From positions 23,808,001-23,872,000 of the forward strand of contig NW_027361825.1 in the NCBI RefSeq assembly GCF_039654945.1: 64,000 nucleotides of DNA, written 5' to 3'. Made by a program: the position numbers and the translations under genes. Position 1 is the stretch's first letter, and each line of letters starts with the position of its first letter. The notes below the pieces were generated by a model. That model was not told the origin of the DNA and ran no database searches. It was given only the letters and a program-made list of their open reading frames with translations. Below are positions 14,066 through 52,600 of the stretch, one piece after another. The DNA comes from Dendrobates tinctorius. Lineage: Eukaryota.

Positions 14066-14080
14066 TTTTTACGTGTATAA
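13019..14080 (+). CDS. Gypsy Gag plus aspartic protease (truncated pol)
   Basis: PEG10/RTL1-like capsid (PDVFFGDRSKF...ISLLRGDPQDWA...LNQGRDSAELYCQKFR), CCHC knuckle CFFCGDASHIISVC, protease FVDSGA; no RT follows. Confidence 0.85.
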   Translation: MEIKQLSDRVEQLAAEVLGISAYLAHSHAVEPKIPTPDVFFGDRSKFLSFKNNCKLFFALKPNSSGSSAQQVKIVISLLRGDPQDWAFSLKPDDPILTNVNAFFQALGLLYDEPNAIDQAEKTLLALNQGRDSAELYCQKFRKWAVLTTWNDNALAALFRKGLSEAVKDTMVGFPVPSGLDDSMSLAIQVGRRLRERRIAREVLPPVEQMSEPMQCDRVLSKAQRQEFTRRNKLCFFCGDASHIISVCPKREKRFAHTFSVGGVQPKFLLAITLICSLSTFSAKAFVDSGAALNLMDLDFAKHCGFPMTPLQTPIPLRGIDATPLAKNKPQFWTQVVMRDTPDHQDNCRFLRV

Positions 14081-31500: not shown

Positions 31501-33561
31501 TTATATTCTATGAGGGGGCTGCATTATACTATATGAGGGGGCTGCTTTATATTCTATGAGGTAGGCTACCCCAACTCCTGCTACATAATTAAGATTTGTA
31601 CTACCTTATATTATACCCTGATATTAGCATGTTTTACCACACAATTGGTGGTCTTGTATTTATTTCTATGTAGCTACATAGTGGGCCCCAAGAATGATTT
31701 TCTCTGGTGGGCCCAAGGTGCTCCAGTCCGACGCTGTGCACAAACCCCAATACTTACATCCTGTACTGACTGCAACCGTTACAGTGATCTATTTTTTTTG
31801 CAGTAAAGCTTCACATTTGACCTTGCTAATGTATGAGGTGACATCGAACTGACGCAAGGATTTTGTTGTGCATGTGGGGCAAGGAAGACTTTTTCTAGCT
31901 CCCCATGTGACAACACATACTTCCTGTAGCAGCACAGTTTCAACCGTGTCAGTACTGGCTGTCCCGGGGCTAGCATGACACCATGTCACGAGATCCCTGC
32001 AGCTAATCAGCACTGGTTTCATTCTCCTCTACTACGGACAATTTAAGAGATCGGGAGGAAGTGAGAGCAGCCGCAGCTGTCACCACCTCTGGATGTTAAC
32101 TACGAGAGTGAAGCCAGCGCTGATTGGCTGCAGGGATCACGTAACATGATGTCAGGCAAGCCCAGGGAGAGACAGAAGGGGCTGTCCGATTTGTGGATAA
32201 GCCCTTTAAAGGTTGTTATGTAGCAAACACTTGTTCACTTCCAATTTCTCTGCTTCGCATCAGTGAAGGGGAACATAATCCCACAAATTCAAATACTGGA
32301 CACATCTGACGGTTTGCTACAGATACGTCCATCCGTTCAATCCCCTATGAGGGAAGCAGTCTGGACCCCAGACCAGCTTTTCCATGCGCTGATACATATA
32401 TATATCTTCCTATAATCCCAAGGATTGCCCCTCCCCATCATACAGTGTCTCACAGATGGTTATTTGCATTTTGTAACAAAAAAAAAACTCATTCATTGAC
32501 AGAAAACAAGAACCTTTAAAAATGACTGAGAAATTGTAAAACAAAACTGGAAAGTCCCTTTAAAGGGAATCTGTCACCCCTTTTTTGAGATTTCTTCTTG
32601 TGTAGAGCAAGACAGGGAGGGGGCGAGCAGGTGAATAAGCCCCGCCCAGCGGACCGGACCGTGGCAGTTTACATACATCTGAACCGATATAAAAAAGGTA
32701 TTTATGCATGAAAGGTGCGGGGTCAGGGGGAAGCAAAAGTACTAAGAGAATCCTTATGTGACACACAATTGAATGATATCATTATATGATATCTCAGAAA
32801 AGGGTGACAGATTCCCTTTAAGGGCAGGGCTACTCACAGCCTACTGCAGTCATGTGGGTGGTCTGTGACATATTGTCACATGACACTGGTCTCTCCAAGG
32901 ACTCTGGGCAAGTCGCATTACCCATTTCTCTTGCAACCGTTACCAGGAAACGTATGGCCGTCCACACAATCTATTCACTTGACAGTCGCTAAGTAACTCC
33001 ATGTGATAACATTCACGATGGTGGCCACAGAATTGTCCACAGCAACCAGTCAGCTTTCATTTTACTGCAGCAGGCTTTGAGCAGTAAGCAGTGATTTTGT
33101 TGGTGGCTATGGGTAACATTCTGTTCTATTTATACAATGCAACCAATCTGCTTCCAGCATTTGTAAGAAATAAGCAGTGGTCTGAGTGGCTAATATCGGC
33201 AACCAATCAGATTACAGCTTTTATTTTACTACAGTAAGGTGGAAGAAGAATGCAGCGGCCTGATTGGATATCAACAGCAAACAAACATTTGATTTTGGTA
33301 GCCAATCAGATTCCAGCTTTTATTTTCACATAGGCTGGATACAAGACATCAGAGATCTGATTGGTTGATACTTGGATCCGATTTACACCAGACTGTATCG
33401 GTCGTATCAGACTATCAGTCCTATCATGCGCATCAGATCTCACCCCAGCATGGCCCGACTCACCCGAACAGCCCGGAGAAGAAGGACTGGGAAGACCGGA
33501 TTTTCTTATCGGCCTCAGCCAGCAGCTGCATGGCCTCCTTCTCCTTCCCGGAGTTATCCAT
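19915..33561 (-). CDS. napa: Alpha-SNAP (NSF attachment protein alpha), complete 11-exon CDS, 888 nt / 295 aa
   Basis: Exons 33464-33561, 29099-29178, 27845-27961, 22860-22906, 22659-22736, 22102-22157, 21783-21867, 21547-21651, 21394-21462, 21172-21222, 19915-20016. All GT-AG with consistent phases; protein [17 protein letters not shown]...[13 protein letters not shown] near-identical to human NAPA; syntenic with kptn and znf541. Confidence 0.97.
20335..20491. mobile_element. Short Harbinger-type MITE
   Basis: TIR GGCCAGGATCACAC...GTGTGATCCCGGCC. Confidence 0.65.
21172..21222 (-). CDS. napa: napa exon 10
   Basis: [17 protein letters not shown], 51 bp. Confidence 0.95.
21394..21462 (-). CDS. 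napa: napa exon 9
   Basis: [23 protein letters not shown], 69 bp. Confidence 0.95.
21547..21651 (-). CDS. napa: napa exon 8
   Basis: [35 protein letters not shown], 105 bp. Confidence 0.95.
21783..21867 (-). CDS. napa: napa exon 7
   Basis: [28 protein letters not shown], 85 bp. Confidence 0.95.
22102..22157 (-). CDS. napa: napa exon 6
   Basis: [18 protein letters not shown](S), 56 bp. Confidence 0.95.
22659..22736 (-). CDS. napa: napa exon 5
   Basis: [26 protein letters not shown], 78 bp. Confidence 0.95.
22860..22906 (-). CDS. napa: napa exon 4
   Basis: (E)[15 protein letters not shown], 47 bp. Confidence 0.95.
23023..24661 (+). mobile_element. Full-length Tc1 transposon with long TIRs, frameshifted transposase
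   Basis: TA flanks; ~220-bp inverted repeats (CAGTTAAGTCCATATATATTTGGACAGAGAC...). Transposase pieces 23375-24408 in several frames ([22 protein letters not shown]). Confidence 0.92.
24664..26275 (-). mobile_element. Full-length Tc1 transposon, decayed transposase
   Basis: TIR CAGTTGAAACCAGAAGTTTCCATACAC; ORF pieces 25401-25676 (WSDESK) and 24787-25320 ([18 protein letters not shown]). Confidence 0.92.
26598..26908. mobile_element. hAT-type MITE, near-perfect 311-bp palindrome
   Basis: 8-bp TSD CTCACCAC; TAGAGTTGAGCGAC...GTCGCTCAACTCTA. Confidence 0.9.
27845..27961 (-). CDS. napa: napa exon 3
   Basis: (A)[38 protein letters not shown], 117 bp. Confidence 0.95.
28405..28783. mobile_element. 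Harbinger-type MITE
   Basis: TIR GGCTGTGTGCACA...TGTGCACACAGCC; similar to the 7489 and 44153 copies. Confidence 0.75.
29099..29178 (-). CDS. napa: napa exon 2
   Basis: [26 protein letters not shown], 80 bp. Confidence 0.95.
30377..31736. mobile_element. Non-autonomous hAT element carrying internal satellites
   Basis: TIR CAGCGTCGGACTGG...CCAGTCCGACGCTG; 8-bp TSD TGCACAAA. Confidence 0.85.
30860..31560. repeat. Degenerate (TATC)n microsatellite plus short GCATTATA...ATGAG minisatellite
   Basis: Visible tandem repeats inside the hAT element. Confidence 0.9.
32564..32817. mobile_element. Kolobok/T2-type MITE
   Basis: TTAA TSD; same TIR (AGGGAATCTGTCACC) as the 8684 copy. Confidence 0.8.
33464..33561 (-). 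CDS. napa: napa exon 1
   Basis: [32 protein letters not shown](G), 98 bp, donor GTGAGT. Confidence 0.95.
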
Positions 33562-33699
33562 AGCGGCGGGGGGAGGAATCACCGAAATGGCGACACCAGA
33601 GCAAGCCGAGGATCAGCGGTGACCAGCAGGCGGGGGCAGGTGAGCACAACCAGAGAAAATCCCAGAGATGAGCTCCAGGGAGGGCGCAGAAGACGACAG

Positions 33700-33815
33700 C
33701 TCAGTGACAGAGATGCTGACACAGCGCTACTTCCGCCCACACTGATCACCTGACCTGGGCACGTCACTTCCGCTCTCACATAGGTCAGCTGACCCACAGG
33801 TCACATGACAGGTTT
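33700..33815. promoter_or_regulatory. Probable bidirectional napa / ZBED-like promoter
   Basis: GC-rich; ETS motifs ACTTCCG at ~33729 and ~33767 (the latter overlapping ACGTCAC); E-box GTCACATGAC 33800-33809; lies between divergent first exons. Confidence 0.65.
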
Positions 33816-34559
33816 AAATCTCCCCGCCGGAGAGCAGGAGGCGGATGGTGATGCCCGCAGCAGAGCAGGTGAGAGCGGGCTGTGCTCGGAGCAGAGCTGC
33901 AGTGTGAAGCATGGAGGAGAAGCGACGGTAGCTCCTTGAAGGGGTTCTCAGGTCTCCAACAATCACTACACGGTGATACCTTTCATTGTGCGCAGCTTAC
34001 ATCCAACTCTGGCTTATTCACGTCTCTCCGTTACTATATACACAGTGGGCCTGGATTACAGAAAGATGGCCACATTGTAGGGTTAATCATACCGGTATAT
34101 GGGCTATCTGTGGTCACATTAATACCATCTCCTATGAATAGAAAGTGAGGTCACTGAATAATCCTAATACTGTCCAGGACAATGGGGGTTAATGGGTGGA
34201 GGGTGAGGTGGGGTCGATGCAGCGATCACTGATCATCGCTCTCTGTTTGCAGGTGTCCTTATCGCAGCAGAAGGCGGTGAGTGCGCTATGGCTTGTGATT
34301 AGCTGCGAAACTAATTAATCTGCAATGCTGAAGCCGGTTTCTTATTCATCTGGCTTCTTATTTTGGGCCGAAGCAGGTTTCTTTTGCTATATATATATCT
34401 TTTATTTTATTTTTTTTACAGGTTTAATGACAAGAGAAAAATACAATGCAGGGAGGTTCCCTGATGAAAATACACTTAAAAAGCATTATATAACTGGGCA
34501 TCAAAGTGAGCACTGAAGGATGTTATTGAAATACTTTGGGTCACTGATCTCATACCACC

Positions 34560-34725
34560 ATTAAATAATAATCTTTATTTTTATATAGCGCTAACATATT
34601 CCGCAGCACTTTACAGTTTGCACACATTATCATCACTGTCCCCGATGGGGCTCACAGTCTAAATTCCCTATCAGTATGTCTTTGGAATGGGGGAGAAAAC
34701 TCAAGCAAACACGGGGAGAACATAC
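34560..34725 (-). mobile_element. 3' tail of an L2-type LINE/SINE
   Basis: ATAATAATAATCTTTATT...ATAGCGCTAACATATTCCGCAGCACTTTACAG tail; a related + strand tail lies at ~15335-15425. Confidence 0.5.
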
Positions 34726-35875
34726 ATAGTGATGGCCATATCAAAGTCCGGTCACTCCAGCGTGGCGCAAATGAGTTCTGGGCATCAGAGCGGGGATCAA
34801 AGTGGGTAAATAGCCAATTTTCACAGATTTCAATAAGTAACTATTGGCTTTCAGGGGTTAAATGGCTTTGATGCCCAGAACACATTTGGGCCGGGCTGGA
34901 ATGACCTGAATTTGATGCAGGCCATCACTATGTAATGCTGGTGTGAGATCAGTGGCCCAAAGTCATTTAACCCTTTTAGTGCCCACTTTGATGCCATTTT
35001 TTTTTTTTTTTTTGTAGCTGTTTGAGTATTCACATCAGGGAATCTCACTGCATTGTATTTTATTTTTGGAAAAAAACAGAAAAGAAAGTGCTGAATAAGA
35101 AACAAACTTCAGCATCGTAATTAATCTTTGGTATTTACAGAAGAACAAAATGGGAGTAATCCCCCCCCCCCCCCTCCATGTGCCCTAACACAGGGAAACT
35201 CTGCACCAAATGTGTCACAAAATGTAACATTTAGTGGAACCTGCTCTGCATGTCAGTTCCCTCTTTGTTCTCGTTATATGATGGGCATCTCCGGACCGTG
35301 CTTGTCATCCCCTCTCTGCATTTTAAAATCGCCTTTCCGTACACAGCCAGCAGACTCGCTTTGAGCAGAGAGCCTGCACGGGCATGAGGCTTTGGCAGCT
35401 GTGTGAATAAAGTAGACAGCAGCACCCACATCAGTCAGGGGATGCCCATCAGCCCACCCAATGCTCATTACGGTATAGCGCCGAACAACTGCATAAGGTG
35501 TGCAGTGCTTTTAAGGCGATATAAGGGCTTATTCGGGGGTAAAATCCTGCAGAGAGATTCCCATACTGTTTTTATCAGCATATAGCTATATTAAAGACAA
35601 GTCCAGCAATACCTTTACGTGGCCGGTCCGTTCCTCCATTACTGGGAAATCGGCGTTTGAATTGATATGCAATTGAAGCTGACAAGCTATTTTAGTAGAT
35701 CTGATGCATCCGTCACTCCAGCTCCATTCGATGCCCAATGCCCCTTCCTGCTTCACTGACACCTCCGACGCATGTGCTGTTACCATTTCATTCCATCACG
35801 CAAGCACACTTATCAGTTTCATAACATGATTCCTGGGTCTGGTGCAAGCACAAATACTTTATTTTTACACACGCG

Positions 35876-37445
35876 CCCCTCTGGCAAAAATCGAGACCAC
35901 TGCAAAACTTTCAGTTTGTCTGATTTTTCTCTTTATAGGTATATTTTTGAGTGAAATGTAAGTTGCTCTTTTATTCTATAAACTACTGACAACATGTCTT
36001 CGAATTTCCAAACAATACATTTTGTATTTATTTTCAGAAAATTAGAAATTATCAAAATAACAAAAAATGCAGTGCTTGCAGATCTCAAATAATGCTAAGA
36101 AAACAAGTTCATAATCATTTAGACACAATACTAATGTTGTAACTCATGAAGAGTTCAGAAATCAATATTTTGTGGAATTTTTAATCACAGCTTTCATGCT
36201 TTTTTACATGCTTTCCACCGGTCTTTCACACTGCTTTTGGGTGACCTTATGCCACTCCTGGTACAAAAATGTAAGCAGTTCTTCTTTGTTTGATGGCTTG
36301 TGACTATCCATATTCCTCTTGATTACATTCCAGAGGTTTTCTATGGGGTTCGTCTGGAGATTGGGCTGACCATGACAGGGATTTGATGTGGTGGTCCTTC
36401 ATCCACACATTGATTGACCTAGCTGTGTGGCATGGCGCATTGTCCTGCTGAAAAAACAGTCCTCAGAGTTGGGGAACATTGCCTGAGCAGAAGGCATCAA
36501 CTATTTTTCCAGGATAACCTTGTATGTGGCTTGATTCGTCTGTCCTTCGCAAAGATTAACCTGCCCAATTCCAGCCTTGCTGAAGCATCCCGAGGTTACC
36601 GATCCTCCTCTAAATTTCACAGTGGGTGCAAGACACTGTGGCTTGTACGCCTCTCCAGGTCTCCATCTAACCATTAGACGACCAGGTGTTGGGAAAAGCT
36701 GAAAATTAGAGTCATCAGAGAAGATTGCCTTACTCCAGCCCTCAAAGGTCCAATCCTTATGGTCGTTGGCAAACTTCAGCCTGGCTCTCCGTTACTTCTC
36801 ATTGATGAAAAGCTTTTTTTCTAGCTTTACATGACTTGAGCCCTGCCTCTAGGAGACTATTACGAACTATTCTTGCCGTGCACTTCACCCCAGCTGCCAT
36901 TTGCCATTCCTTTTGTAGGTTGCTGAGTGACATTCGAATAAGATGAGTCATCCCGGTCAGTGGAGTCGTCTTCACCATCTGCCAGTCTGCAGCTTTGTTG
37001 ACCCCAATATATGCTGCTTGACCTTGGTGTAATTGACTGCCTTCTTAGAAATTTTAAGGATGGAGGCCACATGATGCTCACTGTATCTCTCTGCTAGTAA
37101 AGCCAGAATTGAGCCCTTCTTTTCCTCACCCAAGACTTTTCAACTCCTTTGGCATGGTTAAAGGTTATCTTTTCATTCCTATTACTTTTGGGATATTACT
37201 AGCACTTGTTTTTCATGTAGCTTGTCCTATTGCAAGAGGATTGTGAACACCACAGCAGTGTTTTTATAATTTCCTTTGTTAAATAAGATTTGGTTCAGGT
37301 GATCACCTAATCAGAAGCACATTAAGTAGAATGAGGTGTACTCTGGTTGGAATTCAACCGACACTGGAATGGAATGGCTGTCAGACATGTAGAGAAGCTG
37401 ATTTTATAAAACTGTGCAGCAGTCTCTTAATTTTTGCCAGAGCTG
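35876..37445 (-). mobile_element. Decayed Tc1/mariner transposon
   Basis: Inverted termini CTCTGGCAAAAAT...GAGACCACTGC / GCAGCAGTCTCTTAATTTTTGCCAGAGCTG; degenerate transposase motifs on the minus strand (FSDDSNF, QQDNAPCH). Confidence 0.75.
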
Positions 37446-37939
37446 TGTATATATAAGACCACAACCACTTTGGCATCTCCCCTGAGGAAGCCACCCTTTG
37501 TGGCTATACGCATGGAGACCTCTTCTCCCTGAACCATGCTGTAGCTGGGTCTTTTCAACATGTCTATGTACAGGTTATCCAGTTCCGCCTTTCTCTATGT
37601 GGGATTTTCTTGCTTTTCCTAAGCTGCAATCTATTTACAAAGCTTTAGCCAGCCTACCTACATACATATTTTCTCTCAGCAGGTCTGTATACCCTCAAGT
37701 GTGTGATCCCGTGACTTATTTTGTAATGCCCTTAGTCTCCTCTGTTTATACGTTATCATTCACACTTGCCACCTGAATAAGAAATCCGTGATGCCCTTTA
37801 AAGATCCCCGGCTTCAGTAGTTCTCCATTTATTGTCATTCCCTGTATTTTCATTATTATCAGAGAGAAGTTCCACAACACGACCAACTATCTCCTTTGTT
37901 TCCCCAGATAAAATATCCATTACACATCACAACTATAAG

Positions 37940-39880
37940 ATGGCATCTGGCTTGAGTACCACAATACGACGAAAGAGTGAAAAGGTTTCTAGTCTTGAGA
38001 TGACCTCATCCAGTTTGTCCATGGACCACTGCAAGTCTAAGGTGTGGAACTACTATACAAAGTTGGGCGATGCCTACGTGGAATGTAAGGTCTGCAAGAA
38101 ACAACTGTCGTTCCATAATAGCACCACGACTATGAGGGAGCATCTGGTGAGGAGGCATAGCCTCCGAAGTATTGGCGTTCCGCAAACTAAGGAACAACCT
38201 GACCTTGACTACCATGAACGAGAAGGGGCCGTAAAGAGGTTACGACAAGCAGTCCCAATAAATAGTATATGCCCTTCAGTTTCAGAATCACGACCACAGA
38301 CCATCGCTAACCTGATATTGGAGATGATCTACCGTGACCTTCATCCTCTTTCGGTGGTAGAAGATAATGGTTTGGGTCTTCTTCTTGGCTATTTGGAACC
38401 AAATTTTGACCCTCCAACCTCAACACAACTAGCAGACATGTTGTGGCACAAATATACGGTCGTTAAACAGCAACTCAAGTGTTGTCTTCAGTCTTCCCTC
38501 TCTGTCGTCCTCTCCATTGAAACGTGGGATGATCACCCAAAGAAGTCTTGTCTTTCGATCACTGCCAACGTAATTGACAATGACTGGAGGTTATGTAGGT
38601 ACTTGCTGGAAACGCAACACAATCTCCAAAACAAGAGTGACCACAACCTGTCAGAACGATTATATGCAGTCCTGACAGAGTTTGGATTATCTAGTAACCT
38701 CGTGACCTGCGTTGTACATGATCAATCGGCATCCTTGACGGCTCATGCCCAATCTTTCAGAGTCTCATATGGGTGGGCAAGTTTCTGCTGCACTGCTCAT
38801 GTCCTCCAGCTTTGTGTGCAAGCAGGACTGGAGGTCCAAGATGTGAATGAAGCATTGGGTGCCTCTAGAGGGTTGGTCAGCTACTTCCAAGAAGACTTCA
38901 AAGCCAGCTGCTACCTCGGTGCCAAGTTGGAAGCTATGAACAAACCCAGATTATCCATGGATACGGAACGATGCTGGATTAGCACTTTAGAGATGTGCCA
39001 GAGTTTGCTGGACCTCAAATGGGCAATCCTTTCAATTTTGGAAGAACAAGGTGCTAAGAACTTGTCGGAGCAGCATTGGAAGTTGCTACAAGACTTGGTG
39101 CCCATGTTGAAGACTATATGGATCGCTACGGCATTCCTACAGGAAGAACAAAATGCCTCCATTTCTTCACTGTTGCCCTGCGTGCACGGCATCTTTATGG
39201 CAGTCAGCCAAACCTCTGAAGGCATCTCCAGTGTTAAAGCTGCTGCCTGTCAAATCCGCTCTGAGATCTGCAGACATTGGGATATGTTGGATGAAGAGAA
39301 ACTAATAACCAACCCTTCTGCAATTGCATCCTTTTTGGACCCTCGATTCAAAGAGTTGAGGTTCCTTAAACCATGTGCCAGAGGAGAACTGCACATCACT
39401 GTGAGAAATATGCTAACACAGATGTGTGAACCGTGCTCTTCTCAGCACTCCTGGATGCCAAACAGCTCTGCCGTTGAAGGTGGTGTTGAGACCTTTCAGT
39501 TGGCTGTGCGGAAAGATAAAGGACCAACAGTTGGGTCTGAAAATGTATATGACCTTCTACTGGGAAGAGATCCAACAGAGAGCATGCCCGAGGCTCACCA
39601 GCAGCTGGAGAACTACATGGTGGAACCTGTCTCTAAACGTACCACGGATCCTCTAGCGTGGTGGAACAGTAACAGTCACCGCTTCCCGACATTGGCTCGA
39701 TTAGCACGGCAATATCTGACTATGCCGGCCACTGCTGTAAAGCCGGAACGTGCCTTCAGAACAGTACCAGACCCAATGGAGAAACGCTGTGACAGTCTGG
39801 AATCCAAGTACATGGACCAGATCCTTTTCTTACACCACAATAAAGACTCGGTAGACTTGAGCACAAAACTGAGTGTCTGA
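37940..39880 (+). CDS. ZBED-family protein: BED zinc finger plus hAT transposase-derived domain and C-terminal dimerisation domain (646 aa from this ATG)
   Basis: Uninterrupted ORF with BED finger SKVWNYY...CKVCKKQLSFHNSTTTMREHLVRRH, CTAH motif, ASFLDPRFK and DPLAWW...FPTLARLARQYL...PERAF. Kozak AAGATGG at 37940; splice acceptor TTTCCCCAG at 37907; AATAAA ~40372. Confidence 0.9.
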   Translation: MASGLSTTIRRKSEKVSSLEMTSSSLSMDHCKSKVWNYYTKLGDAYVECKVCKKQLSFHNSTTTMREHLVRRHSLRSIGVPQTKEQPDLDYHEREGAVKRLRQAVPINSICPSVSESRPQTIANLILEMIYRDLHPLSVVEDNGLGLLLGYLEPNFDPPTSTQLADMLWHKYTVVKQQLKCCLQSSLSVVLSIETWDDHPKKSCLSITANVIDNDWRLCRYLLETQHNLQNKSDHNLSERLYAVLTEFGLSSNLVTCVVHDQSASLTAHAQSFRVSYGWASFCCTAHVLQLCVQAGLEVQDVNEALGASRGLVSYFQEDFKASCYLGAKLEAMNKPRLSMDTERCWISTLEMCQSLLDLKWAILSILEEQGAKNLSEQHWKLLQDLVPMLKTIWIATAFLQEEQNASISSLLPCVHGIFMAVSQTSEGISSVKAAACQIRSEICRHWDMLDEEKLITNPSAIASFLDPRFKELRFLKPCARGELHITVRNMLTQMCEPCSSQHSWMPNSSAVEGGVETFQLAVRKDKGPTVGSENVYDLLLGRDPTESMPEAHQQLENYMVEPVSKRTTDPLAWWNSNSHRFPTLARLARQYLTMPATAVKPERAFRTVPDPMEKRCDSLESKYMDQILFLHHNKDSVDLSTKLSV

Positions 39881-40904
39881 GGGTCACATGCTCACTGCCT
39901 GGTCCTTGGCACAAAATACTGGTGGCAACAAACCTCCTACTCCAGACACTAGAGAAAAATGCCACCACACTTGCTCTTATTCCACGCCATAGGATAGGTG
40001 ATAACACCACTGATCACAAGGATGGGGATCTCAAGCCCATGCTCCATTGGCCCTCCATTTATAAGGGGGACTTGGGGACCCGTTCTGAGCTGCCAAACAA
40101 TACCCTTTACAAAAAAGCTTAACTGAGATTTATTAAAACTGCTCCGCACCAACCAGATACTGGCTCTCAGGTTGTTGCTCCAGTTTCAATAACTCCACCG
40201 CAATGCCTCTACTACTGGGCAGATTATCATGAAATCCATACAGTTCATGCACATGCACTTTGTTTTTGTTTTATTTTTTTTTGTAGTGAAATTTTAATGC
40301 CAAAATACAAACCTCACCCCTTTCCCTAAATAACTTATCGATCTGTTTTGCACGTAATTTAAATGTTTTGTAATAAAATAATTTTGCTACTGCAGACGTT
40401 GGTGCCTGATTTATGACGCATCTAGTTGTGTAAGTGAAGAGACATTTTTCCAAAATTGATGGAAAACACTAATCTTTCATCCTCTTTCTGTCAATTCCAG
40501 ATTTCCATTATTGCCAAAATTAAGATATAACACTTCACCACAAAGCTGCGTCTTACCGGCTGCAAAATCTGCATTGAGATGCTGCAATGTAAAATTACCA
40601 CAGTGCCAACTTCTGACTGTGCGTTTTTTTTGTTTTTTTTTTTTGCAGCATTTTGCTTTTATTCTTTATTTTCCCACCTGAATGGGTGAAAAGTGATGAA
40701 AGAATTGACTCTTGGCAGATTTGAGAAAATGCATGCAGCCTCCGTTCCCACAATGAGTTTTTGATGTTACAGATTTTCTGCACGTATTCAGTTGTCTGTC
40801 GTCTTTTTTTTTTTTTTTTTTTGTCTCTTACGTATGGCTTGTTTTCAACAATTCTGCTTTGTTTTTGGCATTTCCGTGGGTCTACCAGCCTTATATATGC
40901 CTAC

Positions 40905-41180
40905 TAGTGATGAGCGAGTATACTCGTTACTCGAGACTTCCCGAGCATGCTCGGGTGTTCTCCAAGTATTTGGATGTGCTCAGAGATTTAGTTTGTCACC
41001 GTAGCTGTGTGATTTGCGGCTACTAGACAAACAGGAAATCCCCACATGTATTCAGGCTGGCTAGCGTCCGCAAATCATGCAGCTACGGCGACAAGCTAAA
41101 TCTCTGCGCACATCCAAATACTTGGATCACCCAAGCATGCTCGGGAAATCTCGAGTAACGAGTAGACTCGCTCATCACTA
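40905..41180. mobile_element. hAT-type MITE (TAGTGATGAG family)
   Basis: TIR TAGTGATGAGCGAGT...ACTCGCTCATCACTA; degenerate 8-bp TSD ATGCCTAC/ATTCCTAT. Confidence 0.8.
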
Positions 41181-43563: not shown

Positions 43564-43672
43564 TTAGTAGATGGAGTGATACTGCGACTTGTAGTGTAAG
43601 GTCCTTTCTCTTTCTTCCTGCAGTCGGTGCTTCTTCATATGAGCGTTGCGGCTCTTCACTTTGTCAAACACT
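43564..43672 (-). CDS. znf541: znf541 last coding exon
   Basis: (R)[20 protein letters not shown]...HSIY*. Confidence 0.9.
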
Positions 43673-46600
43673 CTAATAAAAGAAGAATATTGGTAGTTAA
43701 AGGCTTTGGGGAGAGGAGGGTCTGAGCCCAATATTCCCACCTCTTTTCAGAACAAAACTGACTTCTTGTTATAGATGATAAAACTCAGCTGGCCCTGTTT
43801 GGATTTTTCCAAATTTGCTGAGAAAAAGGTAAAGATTCAGTTTCTGAAAACCCTCTCTTCACCCGACTGCAATTTGTTTAAAAACAAAAACAAAAAAAAA
43901 ATTAAATGCCTAGTCCACCTTCCCAGGTCCAACGCTGAGTCTTCACTGCGGCTCCCGATGTCTGTTGTTGTCTGCAACACTGACATCATGTGCGCTAAGC
44001 AGCTCGTTCAATCTACTCAGGCAGAGCCGTCAGCATGATCTCAGTGCTGCAGATGACACCGGGAGCAGCAGTACATTGACGCCGGACCCAATGAGGGTGA
44101 GCGAAGAACAGCCTCAAACTGAGGCCAGGTTAGAGTGGTATTAGGAAGCTAAGGGTATGTGCACACGGTGCAGATTCTGCTGCGGATCCGCAGCAGATTT
44201 AGGTGCGTTGTACAGTATCATTGTTTTCAATGGTAAAATGCTGTGCATATGCTGCAGATTTTTCCATGCGGTTTTGCTGCGGTTTACAATCCGCAACATG
44301 TCAATTCTTTTGTCCAGAAACGCTGCGGTTTCACACCTCATCCAATATGAGGTGTAAAACCGCAGATAAACCGCAGGACTTTAGTCCTGCGGATTTATCT
44401 GCAGTTTTCACTACAAAATCCGCAGAGGCAAAAAACTGTGTGTGCACATAGCCTTCTGGGGGCAAAAAACATCCAAAAGTGGAAGATGCTTCAAGAAACT
44501 CAGTATCTCTGGCATTTTGTAAACCTGAAGGTGCACATATCCCTAGTCAGTCTACCATTGGCTGTCAAGTAACTAGCCAATCCCTCTGCTGCTTCGCCCT
44601 AAAATGTAGACCTGGCAAATTGCTTATATTGCATCAATTTCCGATCAGCTGGAATTTGATGTTTAGGACCCCCACCAATCCTGAGAATAAGGGGCACTTT
44701 GCCCTGTACAGCTAGGTGAGAAATCTAAATGTTTGGGTAGTGTAGGGCCTTTTTCAAAGAGAAAATGCACTTTTTTTTTTTGCCTTGATAAAGGCCCTAC
44801 GTTGCCGAAATGTTGTGATTTTTTTCTGCATTAATAAAGTTACCAAAAGGAGGAGGATGGCTGGTGCTTGGGTTTCTGGACTTCTATGTATCTCTACAAC
44901 CTAGTGGAGGATAGCACCAAGTGTTGTCCGGGCACAGAGTGGTGCACGAGACTCCTCTATTGCAAATATACTTGTACAGCTGGGTGGCTGGAAGTGCAAC
45001 CATACAGCATGGGAAAGGCCACTGGTGTCATGCCCCCAGAATGGGAAAGGGCACTTGTGTCATGCCACCTCTGCACAGTAGCCACTGATGGGGTCCCGGA
45101 GCTTGGCTCCTCACCAATCACAAGGTGACAGCACTTCCTCCTGACAACATCACCCTGAGATACAAATACCCTATTAATGTCTCTTGTTCTGTGTTTTTGT
45201 GGGCAGATGCATTGTGGCCCTATTATATACCTGTCACACAATTGACATGGAAACTTTATATGGTTTTCTTCTCCTGTTTCCTTCTGCTCCTTGGCTTCTG
45301 TCTTCTTGCTTTTCACTTCTGCTCCACCATGAGGTTCCTATTTCCATGAGATCAAGATTAGTCCGTATGATGGCCGGACACTAGAGCAGAGACCTCTTCC
45401 CTAACTTACCTTTATTCCCTGAGGCTCTTCTGTATCCCAACCCTGATCTGTGCAGAGTGCACGTTCTGGAGTGGGAGATGGGCGTCTCTCGAAGCTGCCT
45501 GTCTTCTTCCAGGTGTAGTAGTACTCCACACACTGGTGAACGCTCTTCCCAGGGATCTATAAGTCAATTTGGCCATTACTTTAGGACAAGGAGCGATATA
45601 TATCACATTGATATCTGGGCAGTGTTATACCTTGACCCCCTTATCTTCTCTGATATTTTCAGAATGAGCTATAGAAGTAAATGGAGAGCACCTCACATGA
45701 ATGGTGACCTCACAATTCCAAGGCCCTTGTCTGGAGACTTAAATCCTCAGCCCTGCACATTGATACTGCAGGAGCCCACAGCTCACACAATGTCACTGTG
45801 CGCAGGCGCCCCATGATGCCATCCTGTCTGTAGTGGCCGCTTGCTGCACACAGGATCACTCAGCAGGGGATGACTGATGCGGACAGGAGAGGGAGATGAG
45901 TGCATTCTGACACACTGCATTTGGCTCCTGCAGTGTCAGGGTACGTGTGATCTCTGCTGTCAGTATCAGCCGTCCGCTGATGTGTGCAGCCAGTGCCTGC
46001 TGCGGACAGGACAAGAGGCTCAGAGGGATCTGCACACAATGGCAATGTATTGGCGCTCGGCTCCTGCAGTGTCAGTGTGTGCCACACTGAGGATTAAACA
46101 CAGACTGTGCTCCTTGGAATGCTGTTAATCATCATAAGGTGAAGGGTGGAAAGTGGTAATTGCAGGGGTGGAACGATGCACCGAGCACTTGGCCGTGTCA
46201 AGAGTGCACCAAAGCGACTAATAAAACTGTAGCGGGGACTTTGCCCCTATAAAAATGTTACTTGCGCCACAGATTTGGATTTTACCTAACTTAGGAAAAA
46301 AATAAGTCCCCTCTATAAAACTATAAATGGTTAAATTTCAATATTGGAGGCGACAGACTCCCTTTTGAATGGGTTGCACAAGTGACAATCATCACTCCTT
46401 TCTTTCAGGAGCTGAGCTTTGCCCTTCACAGGTTGTTTGCTATTGTATTTCAGCTCTACTTCGGTGAATGGAGCGATGATTTTCTAATTATGGACAAACC
46501 TTTTAATCAGATCGGTCTTCCACTGCTATCAACCCGTGTAAACTATGGGGCCTGCCTTAAAACCCCTGCACCAAATGCAAGGATGGCTATATTTTATTTT

Positions 46601-49600
46601 TAAGGGGTTATCTCAATATCATAAATTGCAAACTATTTGTAGAAACCAGCAACTTTTCAATTTACCTCTTATTAAAAAATCTCAAGCATGGAGGGATTTT
46701 TGATTTATATAGTTTGCTGCTCGATGCTGAGGCTACTGGCAACCTTTGCAGACTGCCAGTGGTCGCCGATTCCTAGGCAAGGAGAGCAGCACTTTCATCC
46801 TCTTTGTACAGAGCTTGTGAGCGCTGCTCTGAAGCTGTCAGTATTGCATGATTCAAACAGCTTTGGTGCCCCTGTGCTCCTCCAAGGCTGCAGTGGAAAA
46901 GCTGAGTCTACTTCTTCCAAGACAGAGCACACAGTTCGGGCCGGTGTTGTCGACATGAATTGTCAATCATCAGGAGCAAACCTTCTCCAATCAGCAAGAA
47001 TACTGGAGGCCGAGGAGCGGTGCGCTCGCCGGAGAAAGATCTTGAGACGACCGCTCTAATTTCTTTTTAATGTTCCTTTGAGTGTCTGGCTGGGTGTAAT
47101 CTTACCATGGTCTGTATATAAGAGAAGTTCTTCCTTGCCTTGCAGTAAGCGTTCTCAAACTGCCACTTCTCGGTTACTGACCAGTGATCTGAACCTGCAG
47201 AATAATCGATAAATCAGTGTGCAAAATGATACTGGAAAATCGGCCAGGACTATAATTACAGCGAAGAGCCAGAAAGATGTCCCAGAGCGAATTCTAGTAG
47301 CCCATTGGGCTAGTACTATACAACGACGTTGGCCACAGCACAGGGAGTGCGGCCATAGATTTCTGTACATCGCTGCTATTGCATTGTGACCTGCCAGGTA
47401 CAGCGAGCGGTCAGTCAGTCGGGACCAGTTGGATATTTTGCTTGTCAGTACCTTGGGGGTCACACCACTTCCCCACTCACTTGCATTATGCAGAGAAGTA
47501 GCAGCAGCACACAGCAATCCATGGCTGCACAATCGGTATTTTATTACCTGCATAGTGATAATCTACAAGACATCGAGGAAGAAATCTCTGGTGTTCTTTA
47601 TCTAAAAGTTTCTCCAGCGTCTCCTAAAGCAGAACATGAGAGAATCAGTGGAGCTTCTGACATCCATATCATTTATTTCACTTTTATGATGGAGACCTAT
47701 ATAATTTTTTTTTTTTTTACACCTCCACATCACCTTACATGTTGGAGTATGGAACGGGTTAAAGAGATGATCCCGCTCCACACCATCCAAATGCTGCCTG
47801 CGTCACACAGCCGGAGTCGGCCTTGAACAGCAGCGGGTGCAGTGGACTGCTGCTGTTAACCTCTTAAATTATTAATCTTTGACAAAGTGCATTTAAAACA
47901 TGCAGTCCATGGTGCTCGTCGTTCTGTGCACCCATCAGTTTCCCTGAGATGCAAGAGCTGTTGGGTTTTCATTTCAGCCAGGAGACTGACATAGAAATCT
48001 GTGAGTCTTCTCTATATACTGCAAATCAAAATGGCAAGATTTATCCTCTTTTCTTGTTTTTTTTTTTTTTTTATATGATTTTGTTTTGCTTTTTGACATC
48101 TTTGGGAAACTTTATAAGTAATAAAGCTGACACAATGGTATGGAGTGTCTAGTATATCTAAGAAATATTCCCTATCCTTCTAGGCCATGATTGGGTTTAA
48201 ACAGCTGTGATTGGAGTTGGTTCTGATTCTGGCTCAGCTGTATGATGCATCTGATAACCTGCTGCCAAACGTGCAGGTCCTGTGCCATCCGCATGCTGTA
48301 CATTTGTGTGAGGAGTATCGCCCACCAGTGCTGTAAATGTATGACATGGAAAGCAAGGAAAAAAGTGTGCCTAATGGCACTGTTCCATCGCGCGTGCCAT
48401 CCGCTGCACGTACCAATACAGAACCGTTATTGGCAATGACCTATAAAGCAGGTTGGAGACTGAAGGACTCACCAAGACGTTGCCCCGGCTAAAATGCAGA
48501 CAGTGGAGGGCGAGCTCCAGGTTGCAGCCTCCTCCGGGTACAGCACTGGAGCAGGCAAGTTTGATAAGATGGGAGACTAAGGAAAAGAGAGACATTAGTG
48601 ACTGAGAGGGAATCATGGAGACAAGTATGTGACAATAGTGAAACATTAATCCCATCTGATGTGCCAGACAACAGGTTATAACAGCCACAGTGTGGAGACA
48701 TTCATAAAAGTCATCTATACAGAAAAGTGGATCTTAAATGAGCACCTTCAGTGCAAACTTCAGCCTCGTGCCCGATGATGGAAAAGTAATGTCAGGGGTC
48801 CGTAGACTTCCATAGGCCCAGGTGCCGTACACTGCAAAATGTTTCCCGCAGAGGAGCAATGTATTTCATTACATGAAACGCCTCGAGCCTCTAATACAGG
48901 CTCAAGACGGATTGCGCTTGGATGGGAGGATGGTCCTCCGATCCTCCGTCATCTGGCCTCAGAAGGCCTCCATATGCTGTGTACAAGCCGCATTCATAAA
49001 TGTAACCCCTTCCAGCATCATGCCACACATTCATGGCTCTCGTGGGTGGTACTTCCTGAGCAGCGTGAGTATCACTCAGCCCGCACCTTCATCAGCTGTC
49101 ACCCAATGCGGCAATGGCCGGGTCTGACGCCAAATCCACCCAATCCCCATACTTAACCCCTTAAATACTGCAGACAAAAGTGACTGCAGCACCTAAATAG
49201 TTTTTTTTATTTCTCCCTTTGTAAGGTCTGGGTCAGAGGTGTAGAGGGGTTACTATGACCCCTAGTTTTGCCAATGATGGGAGCCCAATAGGCACTGCCT
49301 ACGGCAGTGTGACACATCGTTAAAGAGGTGGGATACAATATCTATGGACAGACAGGTAGTAAATAGTGATGAGCGAGTATACTCGCTGCTCGGGTTTTCC
49401 CGAGCATGCTCGGGTGTCCTCCGAGTATTTTGGCATGCTCGGAGATTTAGTTTTCCTCCTCTCAGCTGCATGATTTGTGACTTGTAGACAGGCTGAATAC
49501 ATGTGAGAATTCCCTAACGAACAGGCATTCCTCATGTATTCAGCCTGTCTAGCAGTCGCAAATCATGTAGATAAGACGACGCAAACTAAATCTCCGAACA

Positions 49601-52600
49601 CGCCACAATACTCAGAGGTCACCCGAGCATGCTCGGGAAAACCCGACCAACGAGTATACTCGCTCAACACTAGTAGTAAACATATCATGTGACTTTAGAT
49701 TAGTGACTACAATCATCCCCTATGAATAATTTGCCGGAGAGGGGTCTTACTCTCTGCAGTGAGTCTTCGGGGTCTCCAAACCAAGTCAGCCTTTTCTTTT
49801 TCTCCTTCCAACACAGTGCAGTTTCTGCACTCCGGGATCACTGCCTGGAACCTATCTCCGATGTTAATGTGACTTAAAGGGGAAAAAAATCCAAAATGTA
49901 AACTATAAAAGGGATGACGGTTTATCCTCAGATTGCAGTTACTTACGGCTGGACAGAAAACTCTGTGGTGTCTCTGACGAGGCCGACTCCGGCAGTGTCT
50001 ATATCTGCGGGGGTAACACGCACTGTAAGTACCATTATACACACAAGTCCTCATGTCGTACCACCACACGGAAACCAGTACTCACCATCAACACTGAGAG
50101 GCTGGTACTTGGCACTGGAGGGAGCGCAGAAGGTGTGGAAATAGAGGCCGGTACCTTGGCGGATGGGGCTTAGCATGGGAGGGGGGGTGTACTGGCAGTG
50201 GAGGGCACCTTTGTGGAGGTACTCGGATAGCGGGGTGTCTGGTGAGCGCATGCTGCTCTGGAAACAACCAGAGGGGGCAGAATTCTTTTCCACCACCGGA
50301 GTGGGGATGTATAAGGGCAGAGGACAAGGTCTTTTCTTTTTCCCCTTTTTCATGGTAGACTTTTGATGACCTCTAAGTGCATTCACCTAAACAGCAAAGA
50401 TAAAAGTGCCAACAGTTAAAGGGGTTGTAAAGGGGAATAATTACTTAAAAAGCTCCCCTCACCTTGTTGTCTTTCTTAGTGACTGGCACAGACACAGGGA
50501 TCACCAGGCGTCCTGCAGTCTCGTCCTTCGTTGTCCAGGACCCTGATCCCAGACATTGTGCTGTCGGCTCCCCCGTACGTTGCCAGCTTACTGTATCCCC
50601 TTCTTGAAAGTCCTTTAAAATATCCTATATTGTCATATTTTAACAACGGTCTATAAATGTTTATTTTGGAAGAAAAATCATTTTCATAATTGGTTCTTAG
50701 TACAAATTTTGCACCGTTTGCCTTCCTATAGTCTGTGTGTGTGTGTTGAGCTGTCTATTACTGGGCTGAAGAATGAGTTAACTGAAAATCTATCAGTGAG
50801 AGGAGTTTGTACCTCTTTTGTCTATTTTTTTTCTCAGTTCCTTTCAATTTATGATGAAAGTTGAGCTGAACTTTGTGGTGTAGGAAACATGCCACAGCCT
50901 GGGTTAGTGTGCACATAATCAAACAGAAATTTTAAAAAAGTTAGTTACAAAACTTTCCTAAAGTTTTTATTGTATTATGGCTTCTAAGGCTGATCGCTAA
51001 ACAAATTATCTTTGGATCCGCTCATAAATGGATGAAATGTTCGGAGGCTTAAGAACCCGTAGGATCAGGGTCTTTCCAGTTATGAAACCACACAACAGCA
51101 ATGATACTGGAAGAGTGGGAGGACGTGGGGGAAAAGCATGTAGTCCCAAGGGATTTTAAGTACCGCCTTCCCTTTGATCCAGAGGAGACCAAGGTATGGG
51201 AAACAGTACCAAAAATTGACATACCTGTAGCACGGGTCTCTAAGAAGACAACCATTCCCTTTGAAGACTCTTCTGGCCTTAATGATCCAATGGACAAAAG
51301 GTCGGAGGACCTACTTAAGAAGGCCTGGGAATCGTCTGCAGCCATTATGAAAGCAAACATGGCAGTCACTCCGGTAGCCAGGTCAATGACTCTATGGGTG
51401 GACTCCCAGGGAAGAAATCTTGAAATCGTTACCTTTGCTGAAAATGGCGACCGATTTTATGGCAGGATGCTTCAACAGTCAGCCTGCTTTGCAGCACGAA
51501 ACGTGTTGTCAAACACAGCAAGGCAGGCTTTGTGACTAAGATCATGGACAGGGGACACCCAGTCAAAGAATAAGCTGTGCTCGATACCCTTCACTTGGTC
51601 TACACACATTCGGACCAGTCCTGGATAAGTTGCTTGAGAAAGCATCAGACAAAAAGAAAGGCTTCCCTGAAGAAAAACCGAAGAGAATGCCGTCCTTTCG
51701 GAGGACTCTCTCTCATCCCAGGCAGGACTACAAAGGGAAGGGGAAGTTGGGCAGATGGAGCTACCCCAAGGGTGGCCAAGGTAGAGGCTCCTTTCAGGAC
51801 CATGAACCAAAACCCAGCAGACAATGACGACAGTGGCGTTGGGAGGAGACACCAGTACTTCGTGGGAGGTTGGCAGGAAATTGCCAAGAATCCATGGATT
51901 CTGCACACAGTAGCTCTGGGGTACAGGATAGAGTTCACCCAGTTACCTCTCAAGAGATACTGTCTAACCCCTACCCAGTCTCCAGTGGTCCACCAGATTC
52001 CAAAAAGATATACAAGAATTGTGGGTCATAATTCAGGCGCCACATTCCCAACAATACTAAAGGACATTATTCCAGTCTGTTTTCCCTAAAGAAGCCAGGA
52101 GGGGAATACCAAACAATAATCAACCTGAAACCACTAAACCGGTGGGTGGGTCTACAAGCAGTTCAAAATGGAGTCACTCTGGTCGGTCATGCCACTGATA
52201 AAGGACTCTGTAATGAGCACGCTGGATCTAGAGAGTGCCTATTACCATGTACACATCCATACCTCACACCAAAAATACCTCAGATTTTCGATAAAGAACC
52301 AGGGGAAGGTGCAACATTTTGAGTTCCGGTATCTGCCGTTCGGCCTCTCCTCTGTGCCCCAAATCTTTACAAAACTCAGAGTGGAAATTATGGGCTCCAA
52401 AGAGAAAATAACATTCTCATTGTCCCATACTTGGACGACCTGCTACTAGTAGCAGACTCGCCAGAGCAGATGGAGGAATATTTAGCAACAACCTTGTCAG
52501 TCCTAGAGAGGCTGGGATGGTTAATAAACCTTAAAAAAATAAAGTCTCAGACCAGAAAGGAAGAAAAAGTTTCTGGGTGCTCCTAGGTTCCGAACAGGAG

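What the first reader, a model, noticed from the sequence alone, without database searches (positions are those of the whole stretch)
33805..40380. Candidate domesticated hAT transposase (ZBED-like) gene head-to-head with napa
Seen: every other DNA-transposon ORF in the window is broken, but this 1.94-kb ORF is intact, and no TIRs or 8-bp TSD are visible around it. It has a clean acceptor (37907), a Kozak ATG (37940) and a poly(A) signal. The first catalytic motif reads VLSIETW instead of the usual hAT (S/T)xDxW, while HDQ, CTAH and PERAF are retained. Established: ZBED1/4/6 are domesticated hAT transposases acting as DNA-binding regulators. From recall, the human KPTN-NAPA-ZNF541 block has no such protein-coding gene. 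Inference: an old exapted, probably catalytically impaired transposase, driven by the napa promoter and possibly lost in mammals.
Basis: partly seen in the sequence, partly recalled or inferred. Interest (0 to 1): 0.8.

Follow-up and report, generated by a model that had tools for sequence, protein, structure and literature searches.

The report
Ancient domesticated hAT gene beside napa
This is a real, expressed, single-copy frog gene built from a hAT transposase, kept between napa and znf541 under purifying selection since the first jawed vertebrates; it has no counterpart among mammalian proteins, databases only auto-label it "ZBED1-like", and I found no study of it.

Summary
Window 37940-39880 (+) is an intact 646-codon ORF in Dendrobates tinctorius. 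It has a BED zinc finger, a Hermes-like RNase-H core and a hAT dimerisation domain, and no flanking TIRs.

It is exon 2 of a spliced gene (exon 1 ends at 33868, acceptor at 37907/8). The gene is transcribed divergently from napa; the two start codons are 243 bp apart.

- **Age and inheritance:** one orthologue per species from sharks and rays to birds. The gene tree follows the species tree.
- **Synteny:** the order SNAP(-)/ZBED(+)/ELM2-ZNF541(-) is the same in frogs, alligator and gar.
- **Selection:** frog dN/dS is 0.12-0.16.
- **Conservation:** the BED Cys/His residues are invariant. The catalytic triad is relaxed: E-D-E here, canonical D-D-E in only 5 of 125 orthologues.
- **Expression:** transcript contigs confirm the exon boundary and the splice.
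- **Mammals:** no mammalian protein falls in the clade.

By position it is not ZBED1 (DHRSX), ZBED4 (ALG12) or ZBEDX (LRRC61). It is an already-annotated ("ZBED1-like") gene, and I found no paper on it.

Most likely it is a DNA-binding, oligomerising regulator rather than a transposase. Its relation to ZBED1/4/6 and any mammalian pseudogene relic were not tested.

The parts
33463..33773 (-). napa (alpha-SNAP) exon 1; start codon at 33561-33559
   Evidence: Transcript contigs of 2.1-2.2 kb lie on 33463-33773 in three runs. The reverse strand reads [20 protein letters not shown]. The public record calls a 295-aa SNAP-family gene here.
33562..33804 (.). Shared divergent promoter interval between the two annotated start codons (60% G+C, CpG o/e 0.6)
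   Evidence: The interval is 87% identical to Anomaloglossus; two CACTTCCG motifs are conserved. The divergent transcripts lie less than about 100 bp apart.
33805..33868 (+). Exon 1 as annotated (the 5' end is not mapped); it holds the non-conserved in-frame ATG of NCBI isoform X1; donor GT at 33869-33870
   Evidence: The splice joint 33868|37908 is seen in a contig of run X18. The ATG is GTG in Anomaloglossus.
33869..37907 (+). Intron (4039 nt) filled with repeats
   Evidence: The unique intron bins have zero contig depth, and the joint has GT..AG ends.
37908..40395 (+). Exon 2: short leader, whole conserved CDS and 3' UTR (the 3' end is approximate)
   Evidence: Contigs begin at 37907/8 and run about 835-1380 nt beyond 39449.
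37940..39880 (+). Conserved coding sequence, 646 codons plus stop
   Evidence: Frog orthologues of 645-648 aa start at the same MAS....
38039..38164 (+). BED zinc finger (residues 34-75; C49, C52, H68, H73)
   Evidence: Pfam zf-BED at 3.5e-11. The Cys/His residues are invariant in 125 orthologues. pLDDT is 87-91.
38291..39427 (+). Transposase-derived core (residues 118-496): helical N-domain, RNase-H-like strands and an all-alpha insertion domain; E194, D261, C284/H287, W346
   Evidence: phmmer to Hermes over residues 171-632, E 3.6e-12. AlphaFold model pLDDT is mostly above 90. Foldseek top hits are Hermes, E 3.5e-16.
39608..39844 (+). hAT C-terminal dimerisation domain (residues 557-635; E603 at the Hermes E572 position)
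   Evidence: Pfam Dimer_Tnp_hAT at 6.9e-16.
40372..40377 (+). AATAAA poly(A) signal
   Evidence: Sequence. Contig lengths imply transcript ends near or beyond 40285-40325.
43570..49964 (-). 3' exons of the znf541-like (ELM2) neighbour, tail-to-tail with the gene
   Evidence: tblastx hits are collinear with the gar ELM2 gene next to the gar orthologue, sum E 2.7e-16.

Best explanation
The locus is a host gene derived from an Ac-type hAT transposase that became fixed between napa and znf541 before the last common ancestor of jawed vertebrates. It has been inherited vertically ever since.

In Dendrobates tinctorius it is a two-exon gene. A short non-conserved exon 1 lies next to the napa promoter. 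A 4-kb intron follows, and exon 2 carries the whole conserved 646-aa ORF.

The gene is transcribed divergently from napa out of a shared, G+C-rich, ETS-motif-bearing promoter interval.

The protein keeps the full transposase architecture: a BED finger, a disordered linker, an RNase-H-like core with an alpha-helical insertion, and a hAT dimerisation domain.

Selection holds the zinc-finger ligands, the fold and the C-terminal domain fixed. It lets the catalytic residues drift.

Inferred mechanism: the protein no longer moves DNA. It works as a sequence-specific DNA-binding factor. The BED finger reads DNA, and the transposase body and C-terminal domain provide homo-oligomerisation and partner binding, as in ZBED1/DREF and ZBED6.

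Shown here: gene structure, expression, age, synteny, purifying selection, and the pattern of conserved and relaxed residues.

Inferred only: DNA binding, oligomerisation, a regulatory role and loss of catalysis.
For: Domain content. Hermes alignment and fold. No TIRs. One hAT locus in the window and one contig for the protein.

117 orthologue clusters with identity graded by phylogeny. The clade is 100% supported and species-tree-like, with short branches compared with transposon copies. A score gap separates the clade (315 bits or more) from all other hATs (234 bits or less).

SNAP/ZBED/ELM2 synteny in Dendrobates, Anomaloglossus, Bufo, Hyla, alligator and gar.

dN/dS is 0.12-0.16 at dS 0.46-0.82, and low in every domain.

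BED CCHH, W196, W346 and C284 are invariant. The triad is E-D-D in 51, E-D-E in 30 and D-D-E in 5 of 125 orthologues; the rest carry a non-acidic residue or an alignment gap at one or more sites, apart from one K-D-D.

The spliced transcript and its exon boundary appear in three runs of the same organism and in one run of a close relative. The promoter interval is conserved.
Against: No functional assay exists. DNA binding, dimerisation and regulatory activity are inferred from homology.

Acidic residues remain at all three catalytic positions in 69% of orthologues. Both Trp residues and the Cys are invariant. Metal binding or residual nuclease activity is therefore not excluded.

The transcription start sites were not mapped. 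Contigs show only where transcripts lie.

The runs used are recorded as kind unknown. I read them as RNA because unique intron stretches have no depth and a GT..AG joint is present.
Confidence: 0.85

Rival explanations
1. The protein is still an enzyme. On this reading it is a domesticated nuclease or recombinase that cuts or joins DNA, using an altered acidic triad (E-D-E or E-D-D) in the RNase-H site, rather than acting only as a DNA-binding scaffold.
For: 86 of 125 orthologues keep an acidic residue at all three triad positions. D261 is kept in 111 of 125. W196, W346 and C284 are invariant. Coelacanth and caecilians keep canonical D-D-E plus CxxH. The catalytic core has dN/dS 0.10-0.15.
Against: Individual healthy lineages carry V, Q, H or K at position 1, N, G or E at position 2, and A, K, G, V, R, N, T, Q, H or S at position 3. 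The CxxH histidine is lost in 80 of 123 scored orthologues. By established knowledge of DDE enzymes, Asp-to-Glu swaps in the triad usually abolish or cripple catalysis.
Confidence: 0.1
2. It is simply the frog orthologue of ZBED1 (hDREF/TRAMP), as the database name suggests, so it is a known gene with known functions.
For: NCBI names it 'E3 SUMO-protein ligase ZBED1-like', or 'ZBED1' in alligator, gar and rays. It has one BED finger and is about 650-730 aa, like ZBED1.
Against: ZBED1 orthologues in mammals, birds, frog, lizard and fish lie upstream of DHRSX (PMC3606216). This gene lies between napa and znf541 from gar to alligator.

The human ZBED1 BED domain (PDB 2ct5) matches only at E 0.15. 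Its motif is absent from the 150 best representatives, so more than 130 clusters of ordinary hATs score better than ZBED1.

No mammal falls in the clade.
Confidence: 0.03
3. It is a recently inserted or still autonomous hAT transposon whose ORF happens to be intact.
For: It has full-length transposase architecture, and the ORF sits in a single exon.
Against: There are no TIRs. It is single-copy. The orthologous position has been held for more than 400 million years. There is strong purifying selection between species. The gene has a host intron and promoter.
Confidence: 0.01

Closest known systems
ZBED1 (hDREF/TRAMP, 'E3 SUMO-protein ligase ZBED1')
   Same: A domesticated Ac-type hAT with one BED finger, a full transposase body and a hAT dimerisation domain. 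It is of similar length and old in jawed vertebrates. It gives this gene its database name.
   Different: It sits at a different locus (DHRSX versus napa/znf541). The BED domains are only weakly similar (E 0.15 to PDB 2ct5). ZBED1 is present in mammals, whereas this clade is not. SUMO-ligase or DRE-binding activity is untested here.
ZBED4 / ZBED6 / ZBEDX / ZBED6CL clade (Hayward et al. 2013, PMC3606216)
   Same: Vertebrate host genes derived from hAT transposases that act, or are thought to act, as DNA-binding regulators. Fish orthologues of the present gene are often auto-named 'ZBED4' or 'zbed4-like 2'.
   Different: ZBED4 lies at ALG12 and has four BED fingers. ZBED6 lies in ZC3H11A intron 1 and is placental only. 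ZBEDX lies upstream of LRRC61 and has two BED fingers. The present gene has one BED finger and a different, conserved locus. The phylogenetic relation was not tested.
Hermes transposase (Musca domestica), the structural reference for hAT
   Same: It aligns over residues 171-632 and is the top structural match (TM by target 0.66-0.70). W319, C265 and D248 equivalents are kept.
   Different: Hermes is an active transposase with D180/D248/E572 and TIRs. Here D180 is Glu, the triad drifts among orthologues, and there are no TIRs.
Plant SLEEPER genes (DAYSLEEPER)
   Same: Domesticated Ac-like hAT genes with a BED finger and a hAT dimerisation domain, degenerate catalytic residues and essential host roles.
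   Different: An independent domestication in angiosperms with no orthology. The comparison rests on recall and on PMC11351766's abstract only.

Membership tests
hAT superfamily transposase (protein architecture) | N-terminal BED zinc finger (CCHH) | tested here: met
   Pfam zf-BED at 3.5e-11. C49, C52, H68 and H73 are invariant.
hAT superfamily transposase (protein architecture) | RNase-H-like core interrupted by an all-alpha insertion domain | tested here: met
   Sequence alignment to Hermes over 171-632. The model is confident over 118-496. Hermes chains are the 12 best Foldseek hits.
hAT superfamily transposase (protein architecture) | C-terminal hAT dimerisation domain | tested here: met
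   Pfam Dimer_Tnp_hAT at 6.9e-16, residues 557-635.
hAT superfamily transposase (active enzyme) | Canonical D-D-E triad with the CxxH motif | tested here: not met
   The triad is E194-D261-E603 here. D-D-E occurs in 5 of 125 orthologues, and the CxxH histidine is kept in 43 of 125.
hAT transposon (mobile element) | Terminal inverted repeats with an 8-bp target-site duplication, and multiple copies | tested here: not met
   No flanking inverted-repeat pair. One locus in the window and one contig in the collection.
Domesticated transposase host gene | Single orthologue at a conserved chromosomal position across distant taxa | tested here: met
   SNAP(-)/ZBED(+) in four frogs. SNAP/ZBED/ELM2 in alligator and gar, with a collinear ELM2 gene in the window.
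Domesticated transposase host gene | Purifying selection, and a gene tree that follows the species tree | tested here: met
   dN/dS is 0.12-0.16. The tree is (Chondrichthyes,(Actinopterygii,(Latimeria,tetrapods))) with 99-100 support.
Domesticated transposase host gene | Expressed as a host-type spliced mRNA | tested here: met
   Contigs start at the acceptor, the unique intron stretches have no depth, and one GT..AG joint links 33868 to 37908.
ZBED1 orthologue | Located upstream of DHRSX | tested here: not met
   The gene lies between napa and znf541. The ZBED1 position is taken from PMC3606216 Table 1.
ZBED1 orthologue | Groups with mammalian ZBED1 in a phylogeny | tested here: inconclusive
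   No full ZBED1 sequence could be fetched. Indirect evidence: the 2ct5 BED domain matches at E 0.15, and its motif is absent from the best 150 representatives.
ZBEDX / ZBED6CL | Upstream of LRRC61, with two BED fingers | tested here: not met
   One BED finger at the napa locus. The ZBEDX features are taken from PMC3606216.
ZBED-type transcription regulator (function) | Sequence-specific DNA binding and a transcriptional effect | not testable with these tools
   Inferred only from the invariant BED ligands and from analogy with ZBED1 and ZBED6.

The most novel reading that the evidence does not exclude
The napa-linked gene is a separate, so far unnamed and unstudied member of the vertebrate domesticated-hAT repertoire. 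It would be either a third domestication event or an ancient paralogue of ZBED1 or ZBED4. It arose before the shark/bony-vertebrate split, has stayed at one locus for more than 400 million years, and was then lost in mammals (and perhaps in Xenopus). Its active site kept an acidic triad in most lineages, so some members, such as those of coelacanth and caecilians, may still cut DNA.
Probability: 0.5. Interest if true: 0.55.

Novelty: new member of a known kind. Interest (0 to 1): 0.45.

Why it matters
Domesticated hAT transposases such as ZBED1, ZBED4 and ZBED6 are textbook cases of transposons turned into regulators. Their inventory, however, was drawn up mainly from mammalian genomes.

A paralogue as old as jawed vertebrates, kept at one locus under strong constraint in fish, amphibians, reptiles and birds, adds a regulator that mammal-centred work would never have met. 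It has no counterpart among mammalian proteins. It is tractable in zebrafish, chicken and frogs.

The graded decay of its catalytic triad is also useful. The triad is intact in coelacanth and caecilians, E-D-D or E-D-E in most species, and broken in scattered lineages. This gives a natural series for asking when and why a domesticated transposase stops being an enzyme.

Caution: the gene is already present as automatic gene models. The kind of thing is well known, and no function is shown.

Tried and rejected
(1) ZBEDX identity. Rejected: Hayward et al. place ZBEDX upstream of LRRC61 with two BED fingers. The zebrafish 'ZBEDX' of PMC9859435 is a different 630-aa gene.

(2) Fetching true ZBED1, ZBED4 or ZBED6 for a joint tree. 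None is recognisable among the best 150 of 10,596 representatives. The PDB holds only the ZBED1 BED domain. No other route exists without typing sequences, so the tree was limited to the clade plus its 18 nearest hAT representatives.

(3) Synteny in coelacanth, Danio and Rhinatrema. Those exact proteins are not on record. The shark locus has no called neighbours within 10 kb.

(4) Literature. Searches for the fish gene names (dkeyp-117b8.4, zbed4l) found no paper. A search for ZBED together with NAPA or ZNF541 found none that holds ZBED.

(5) ESM Atlas look-alikes gave only generic hAT and ZBED clusters.

(6) Inverted-repeat search. Only chance-level pairs flank the ORF.

The human lncRNA name NAPA-AS1 exists in the literature. 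Its relation to this gene is only a thought and was not tested.
Full report
**What is there**

The window comes from Dendrobates tinctorius (GCA_039654945.1, contig JAYMGB010000048.1).

- **ORF and domains:** positions 37940-39880 on the plus strand form an uninterrupted ORF of 646 codons plus the stop. Pfam finds a BED zinc finger at residues 34-75 and a hAT C-terminal dimerisation domain at residues 557-635.
- **Similarity to Hermes:** phmmer against the PDB aligns residues 171-632 to the Hermes transposase at E 3.6e-12.
- **Predicted structure:** an AlphaFold model built on 52 relatives has mean pLDDT 79.6. The low values are confined to the N-terminus (1-31), the linker after the BED finger (76-114) and one loop (498-533). 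Its 12 best Foldseek matches are all Hermes chains (E down to 3.5e-16, TM by target 0.57-0.70).

The protein therefore keeps the whole hAT transposase architecture.

**Gene structure and expression**

The NCBI model (P0001, 678 aa, 'E3 SUMO-protein ligase ZBED1-like isoform X1') adds 21 codons from an upstream exon.

- **Exon 1:** its ATG is at 33805 and the donor GT is at 33869-33870.
- **Exon 2:** the acceptor AG is at 37906-37907.

Four public runs were laid on 33450-39449.

- **Same organism (three runs):** contigs differ from the window by 0-1 letters. They start exactly at 37907/8 and continue through the ORF. The unique intron bins 34050-34249, 35250-35449 and 37650-37849 have zero depth. 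One contig joins 33868 to 37908 with GT..AG ends.
- **Close relative (one run):** a contig about 97.6% identical also stops at 37907 and continues into other upstream sequence.

The runs are recorded as kind unknown. I read them as RNA because of the missing intron and the canonical joint.

Contig lengths place the transcript 3' ends at or beyond about 40285-40325. That is near the AATAAA at 40372-40377.

The exon-1 ATG has a weak context and is GTG in Anomaloglossus. The N-terminal extension predicted for Anomaloglossus is unrelated. The conserved start is therefore the ATG at 37940, which has A at -3 and G at +4.

**Relation to napa**

- **Position:** the reverse strand of 33561 downward reads [20 protein letters not shown], the start of alpha-SNAP. 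The public record calls a 295-aa SNAP-family gene ending 243 bp from the exon-1 ATG.
- **Transcripts:** napa contigs reach up to 33773. The ZBED-type gene's exon 1 covers at least 33842-33868. The two transcripts therefore diverge from points less than about 100 bp apart.
- **Promoter interval:** it is 60% G+C with CpG o/e 0.6. It is 87% identical to Anomaloglossus, and two CACTTCCG motifs and the donor site are conserved.

This is a shared bidirectional promoter region. The exact start sites are not mapped.

**Not a mobile element**

- No inverted-repeat pair brackets the ORF.
- tblastn with this protein and 136 hAT representatives finds no second hAT locus in the window.
- The protein is on record on one contig only.
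- The other DNA-transposon ORFs in the window are Tc1/mariner pieces of 177-247 aa.

**Age, inheritance and selection**

The word-index search returned 117 orthologue clusters, about one per species. Identity to the frog protein falls with phylogenetic distance:

| Group | Identity to the frog protein |
|---|---|
| Anomaloglossus | 86% |
| Rhinoderma, Bufo | 82-83% |
| Hylids | 80% |
| Bombina, Discoglossus | 58-59% |
| Salamanders, caecilians, tuatara, squamates, turtles, crocodilians, birds | 49-55% |
| Coelacanth | 50% |
| Polypterus, sharks, gar, teleosts | 35-41% |

- **Exhaustive search:** the scan of 1.84 billion representatives shows a clear gap. Clade members score 315 bits or more, and everything else scores 234 bits or less at 25-32% identity.
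- **Who is in the clade:** the names of the clade's representatives are rays, skates, sawfish, elephant shark, sturgeons, gars, Denticeps, birds and Pelobates. No mammal and no cyclostome appears.
- **Tree:** a tree of 38 orthologues plus 18 nearest hAT representatives recovers the clade with 100% support. Its topology is (Chondrichthyes,(Actinopterygii,(Latimeria,tetrapods))). Terminal branches are short compared with the transposon copies, and the frog stem is accelerated.
- **Synteny:** gene order is SNAP(-)/ZBED(+) in Dendrobates, Anomaloglossus, Bufo and Hyla. It is SNAP(-)/ZBED(+)/ELM2-protein(-) in alligator and spotted gar. The window's 43570-49964 minus strand is collinear with the gar ELM2 (znf541-like) gene.
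- **Selection:** Nei-Gojobori dN/dS among four neobatrachian frogs is 0.12-0.16 at dS 0.46-0.82. It is below 0.5 in every domain.

**What selection keeps and what it lets go**

Counts are from 125 orthologues.

| Residue here (Hermes position) | State across orthologues |
|---|---|
| BED ligands C49, C52, H68, H73 | Invariant; the surrounding motifs are almost unchanged from gar to birds |
| W196, W346, C284 | Invariant |
| E194 (D180) | Glu 108, Asp 9, other 8 |
| D261 (D248) | Asp 111 |
| E603 (E572) | Asp 57, Glu 39, non-acidic in 27 |
| H287 (CxxH histidine, H268) | His kept in only 43 |

Canonical D-D-E occurs in 5 of 125 orthologues, including coelacanth and caecilians. E-D-D plus E-D-E account for 81.

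The comparative picture shows the site is under relaxed constraint, although it is mostly acidic.

**Interpretation**

The most likely mechanism is a non-transposing nuclear protein. It would bind DNA through the BED finger and oligomerise or recruit partners through the transposase body and hAT domain. It is expressed from a promoter shared with the housekeeping gene napa. This mechanism is inferred, not shown.

A residual nuclease function is a minority rival, at about 0.1.

**Comparison with known genes**

By position the gene is none of the following (PMC3606216):

- ZBED1, which lies upstream of DHRSX.
- ZBED4, which lies at ALG12 and has four BED fingers.
- ZBEDX/ZBED6CL, which lies at LRRC61 and has two BED fingers.

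The human ZBED1 BED domain (2ct5) matches only at E 0.15. Its motif is absent from the best 150 representatives.

I could not obtain full ZBED1, ZBED4 or ZBED6 sequences. Whether this clade is an old paralogue of one of them or a separate domestication therefore remains open.

I found no paper that names or studies the napa-linked gene. It exists only as automatic models under borrowed names: ZBED1-like, ZBED4, zbed4-like 2 and si:dkeyp-117b8.4.

**Limits**

- Mammalian loss rests on protein databases. No mammalian or human DNA was examined, by instruction.
- Copy number in the whole frog genome was not measured from DNA reads.
- The run kinds are inferred.
- No function was tested.

**Verdict**

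It is a new, uncharacterised member of a well-known kind, and of moderate interest.

Noticed in passing
one search hit list (no window coordinates): No Xenopus or other pipid, and no Rana, protein appears among the 117 orthologue clusters. Rhinophrynus, Bombina, Nanorana, Mantella and Pyxicephalus each have one. This may mean lineage-specific losses or missing annotation.
   Followed up: no
window 33805-33807 versus L006 (Anomaloglossus): The upstream in-frame ATG used by NCBI isoform X1 is GTG in the sister family, and the two predicted N-terminal extensions are unrelated. The 678-aa isoform is probably not the conserved product.
   Followed up: partly
window 40905-41180: A MITE-like palindromic element just downstream of the gene, with nested arms of 56 and 69 nt at 87-93% complementarity.
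   Followed up: no
window 34450-34850 and 35850-37450 (intron): Repeats with very high contig depth in the RNA-like runs. A joint at 36394/5 to 37424/5 that skips about 1029 nt is seen in all four runs. It points to a younger element nested inside an older, transcribed repeat family.
   Followed up: no
window 9284-9925 (+), 24787-25320 (-), 59963-60706 (-): Partial Tc1/mariner transposase ORFs of 177-247 aa with DDE_3 and/or HTH_Tnp_Tc3_2 matches.
   Followed up: partly
window 13019-14080 (+): A 353-aa ORF with a Retrotrans_gag match, from an LTR-retrotransposon gag.
   Followed up: no
window 61764-61940 (-): A 59-aa stretch 39% identical to a BED finger of a multi-BED protein (P0139). It is an isolated BED-like fragment of unknown origin.
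   Followed up: no
window 43570-49964 (-): Exons collinear with the gar ELM2 (znf541-like) gene. The public record calls only a 121-aa product here (window about 43564-47108), so the frog znf541 model looks incomplete.
   Followed up: partly
orthologue alignment: Coelacanth and caecilian orthologues keep the full D-D-E triad plus CxxH and both Trp residues. Frogs, amniotes and ray-finned fishes show Glu at the first position, which suggests parallel Asp-to-Glu changes.
   Followed up: partly
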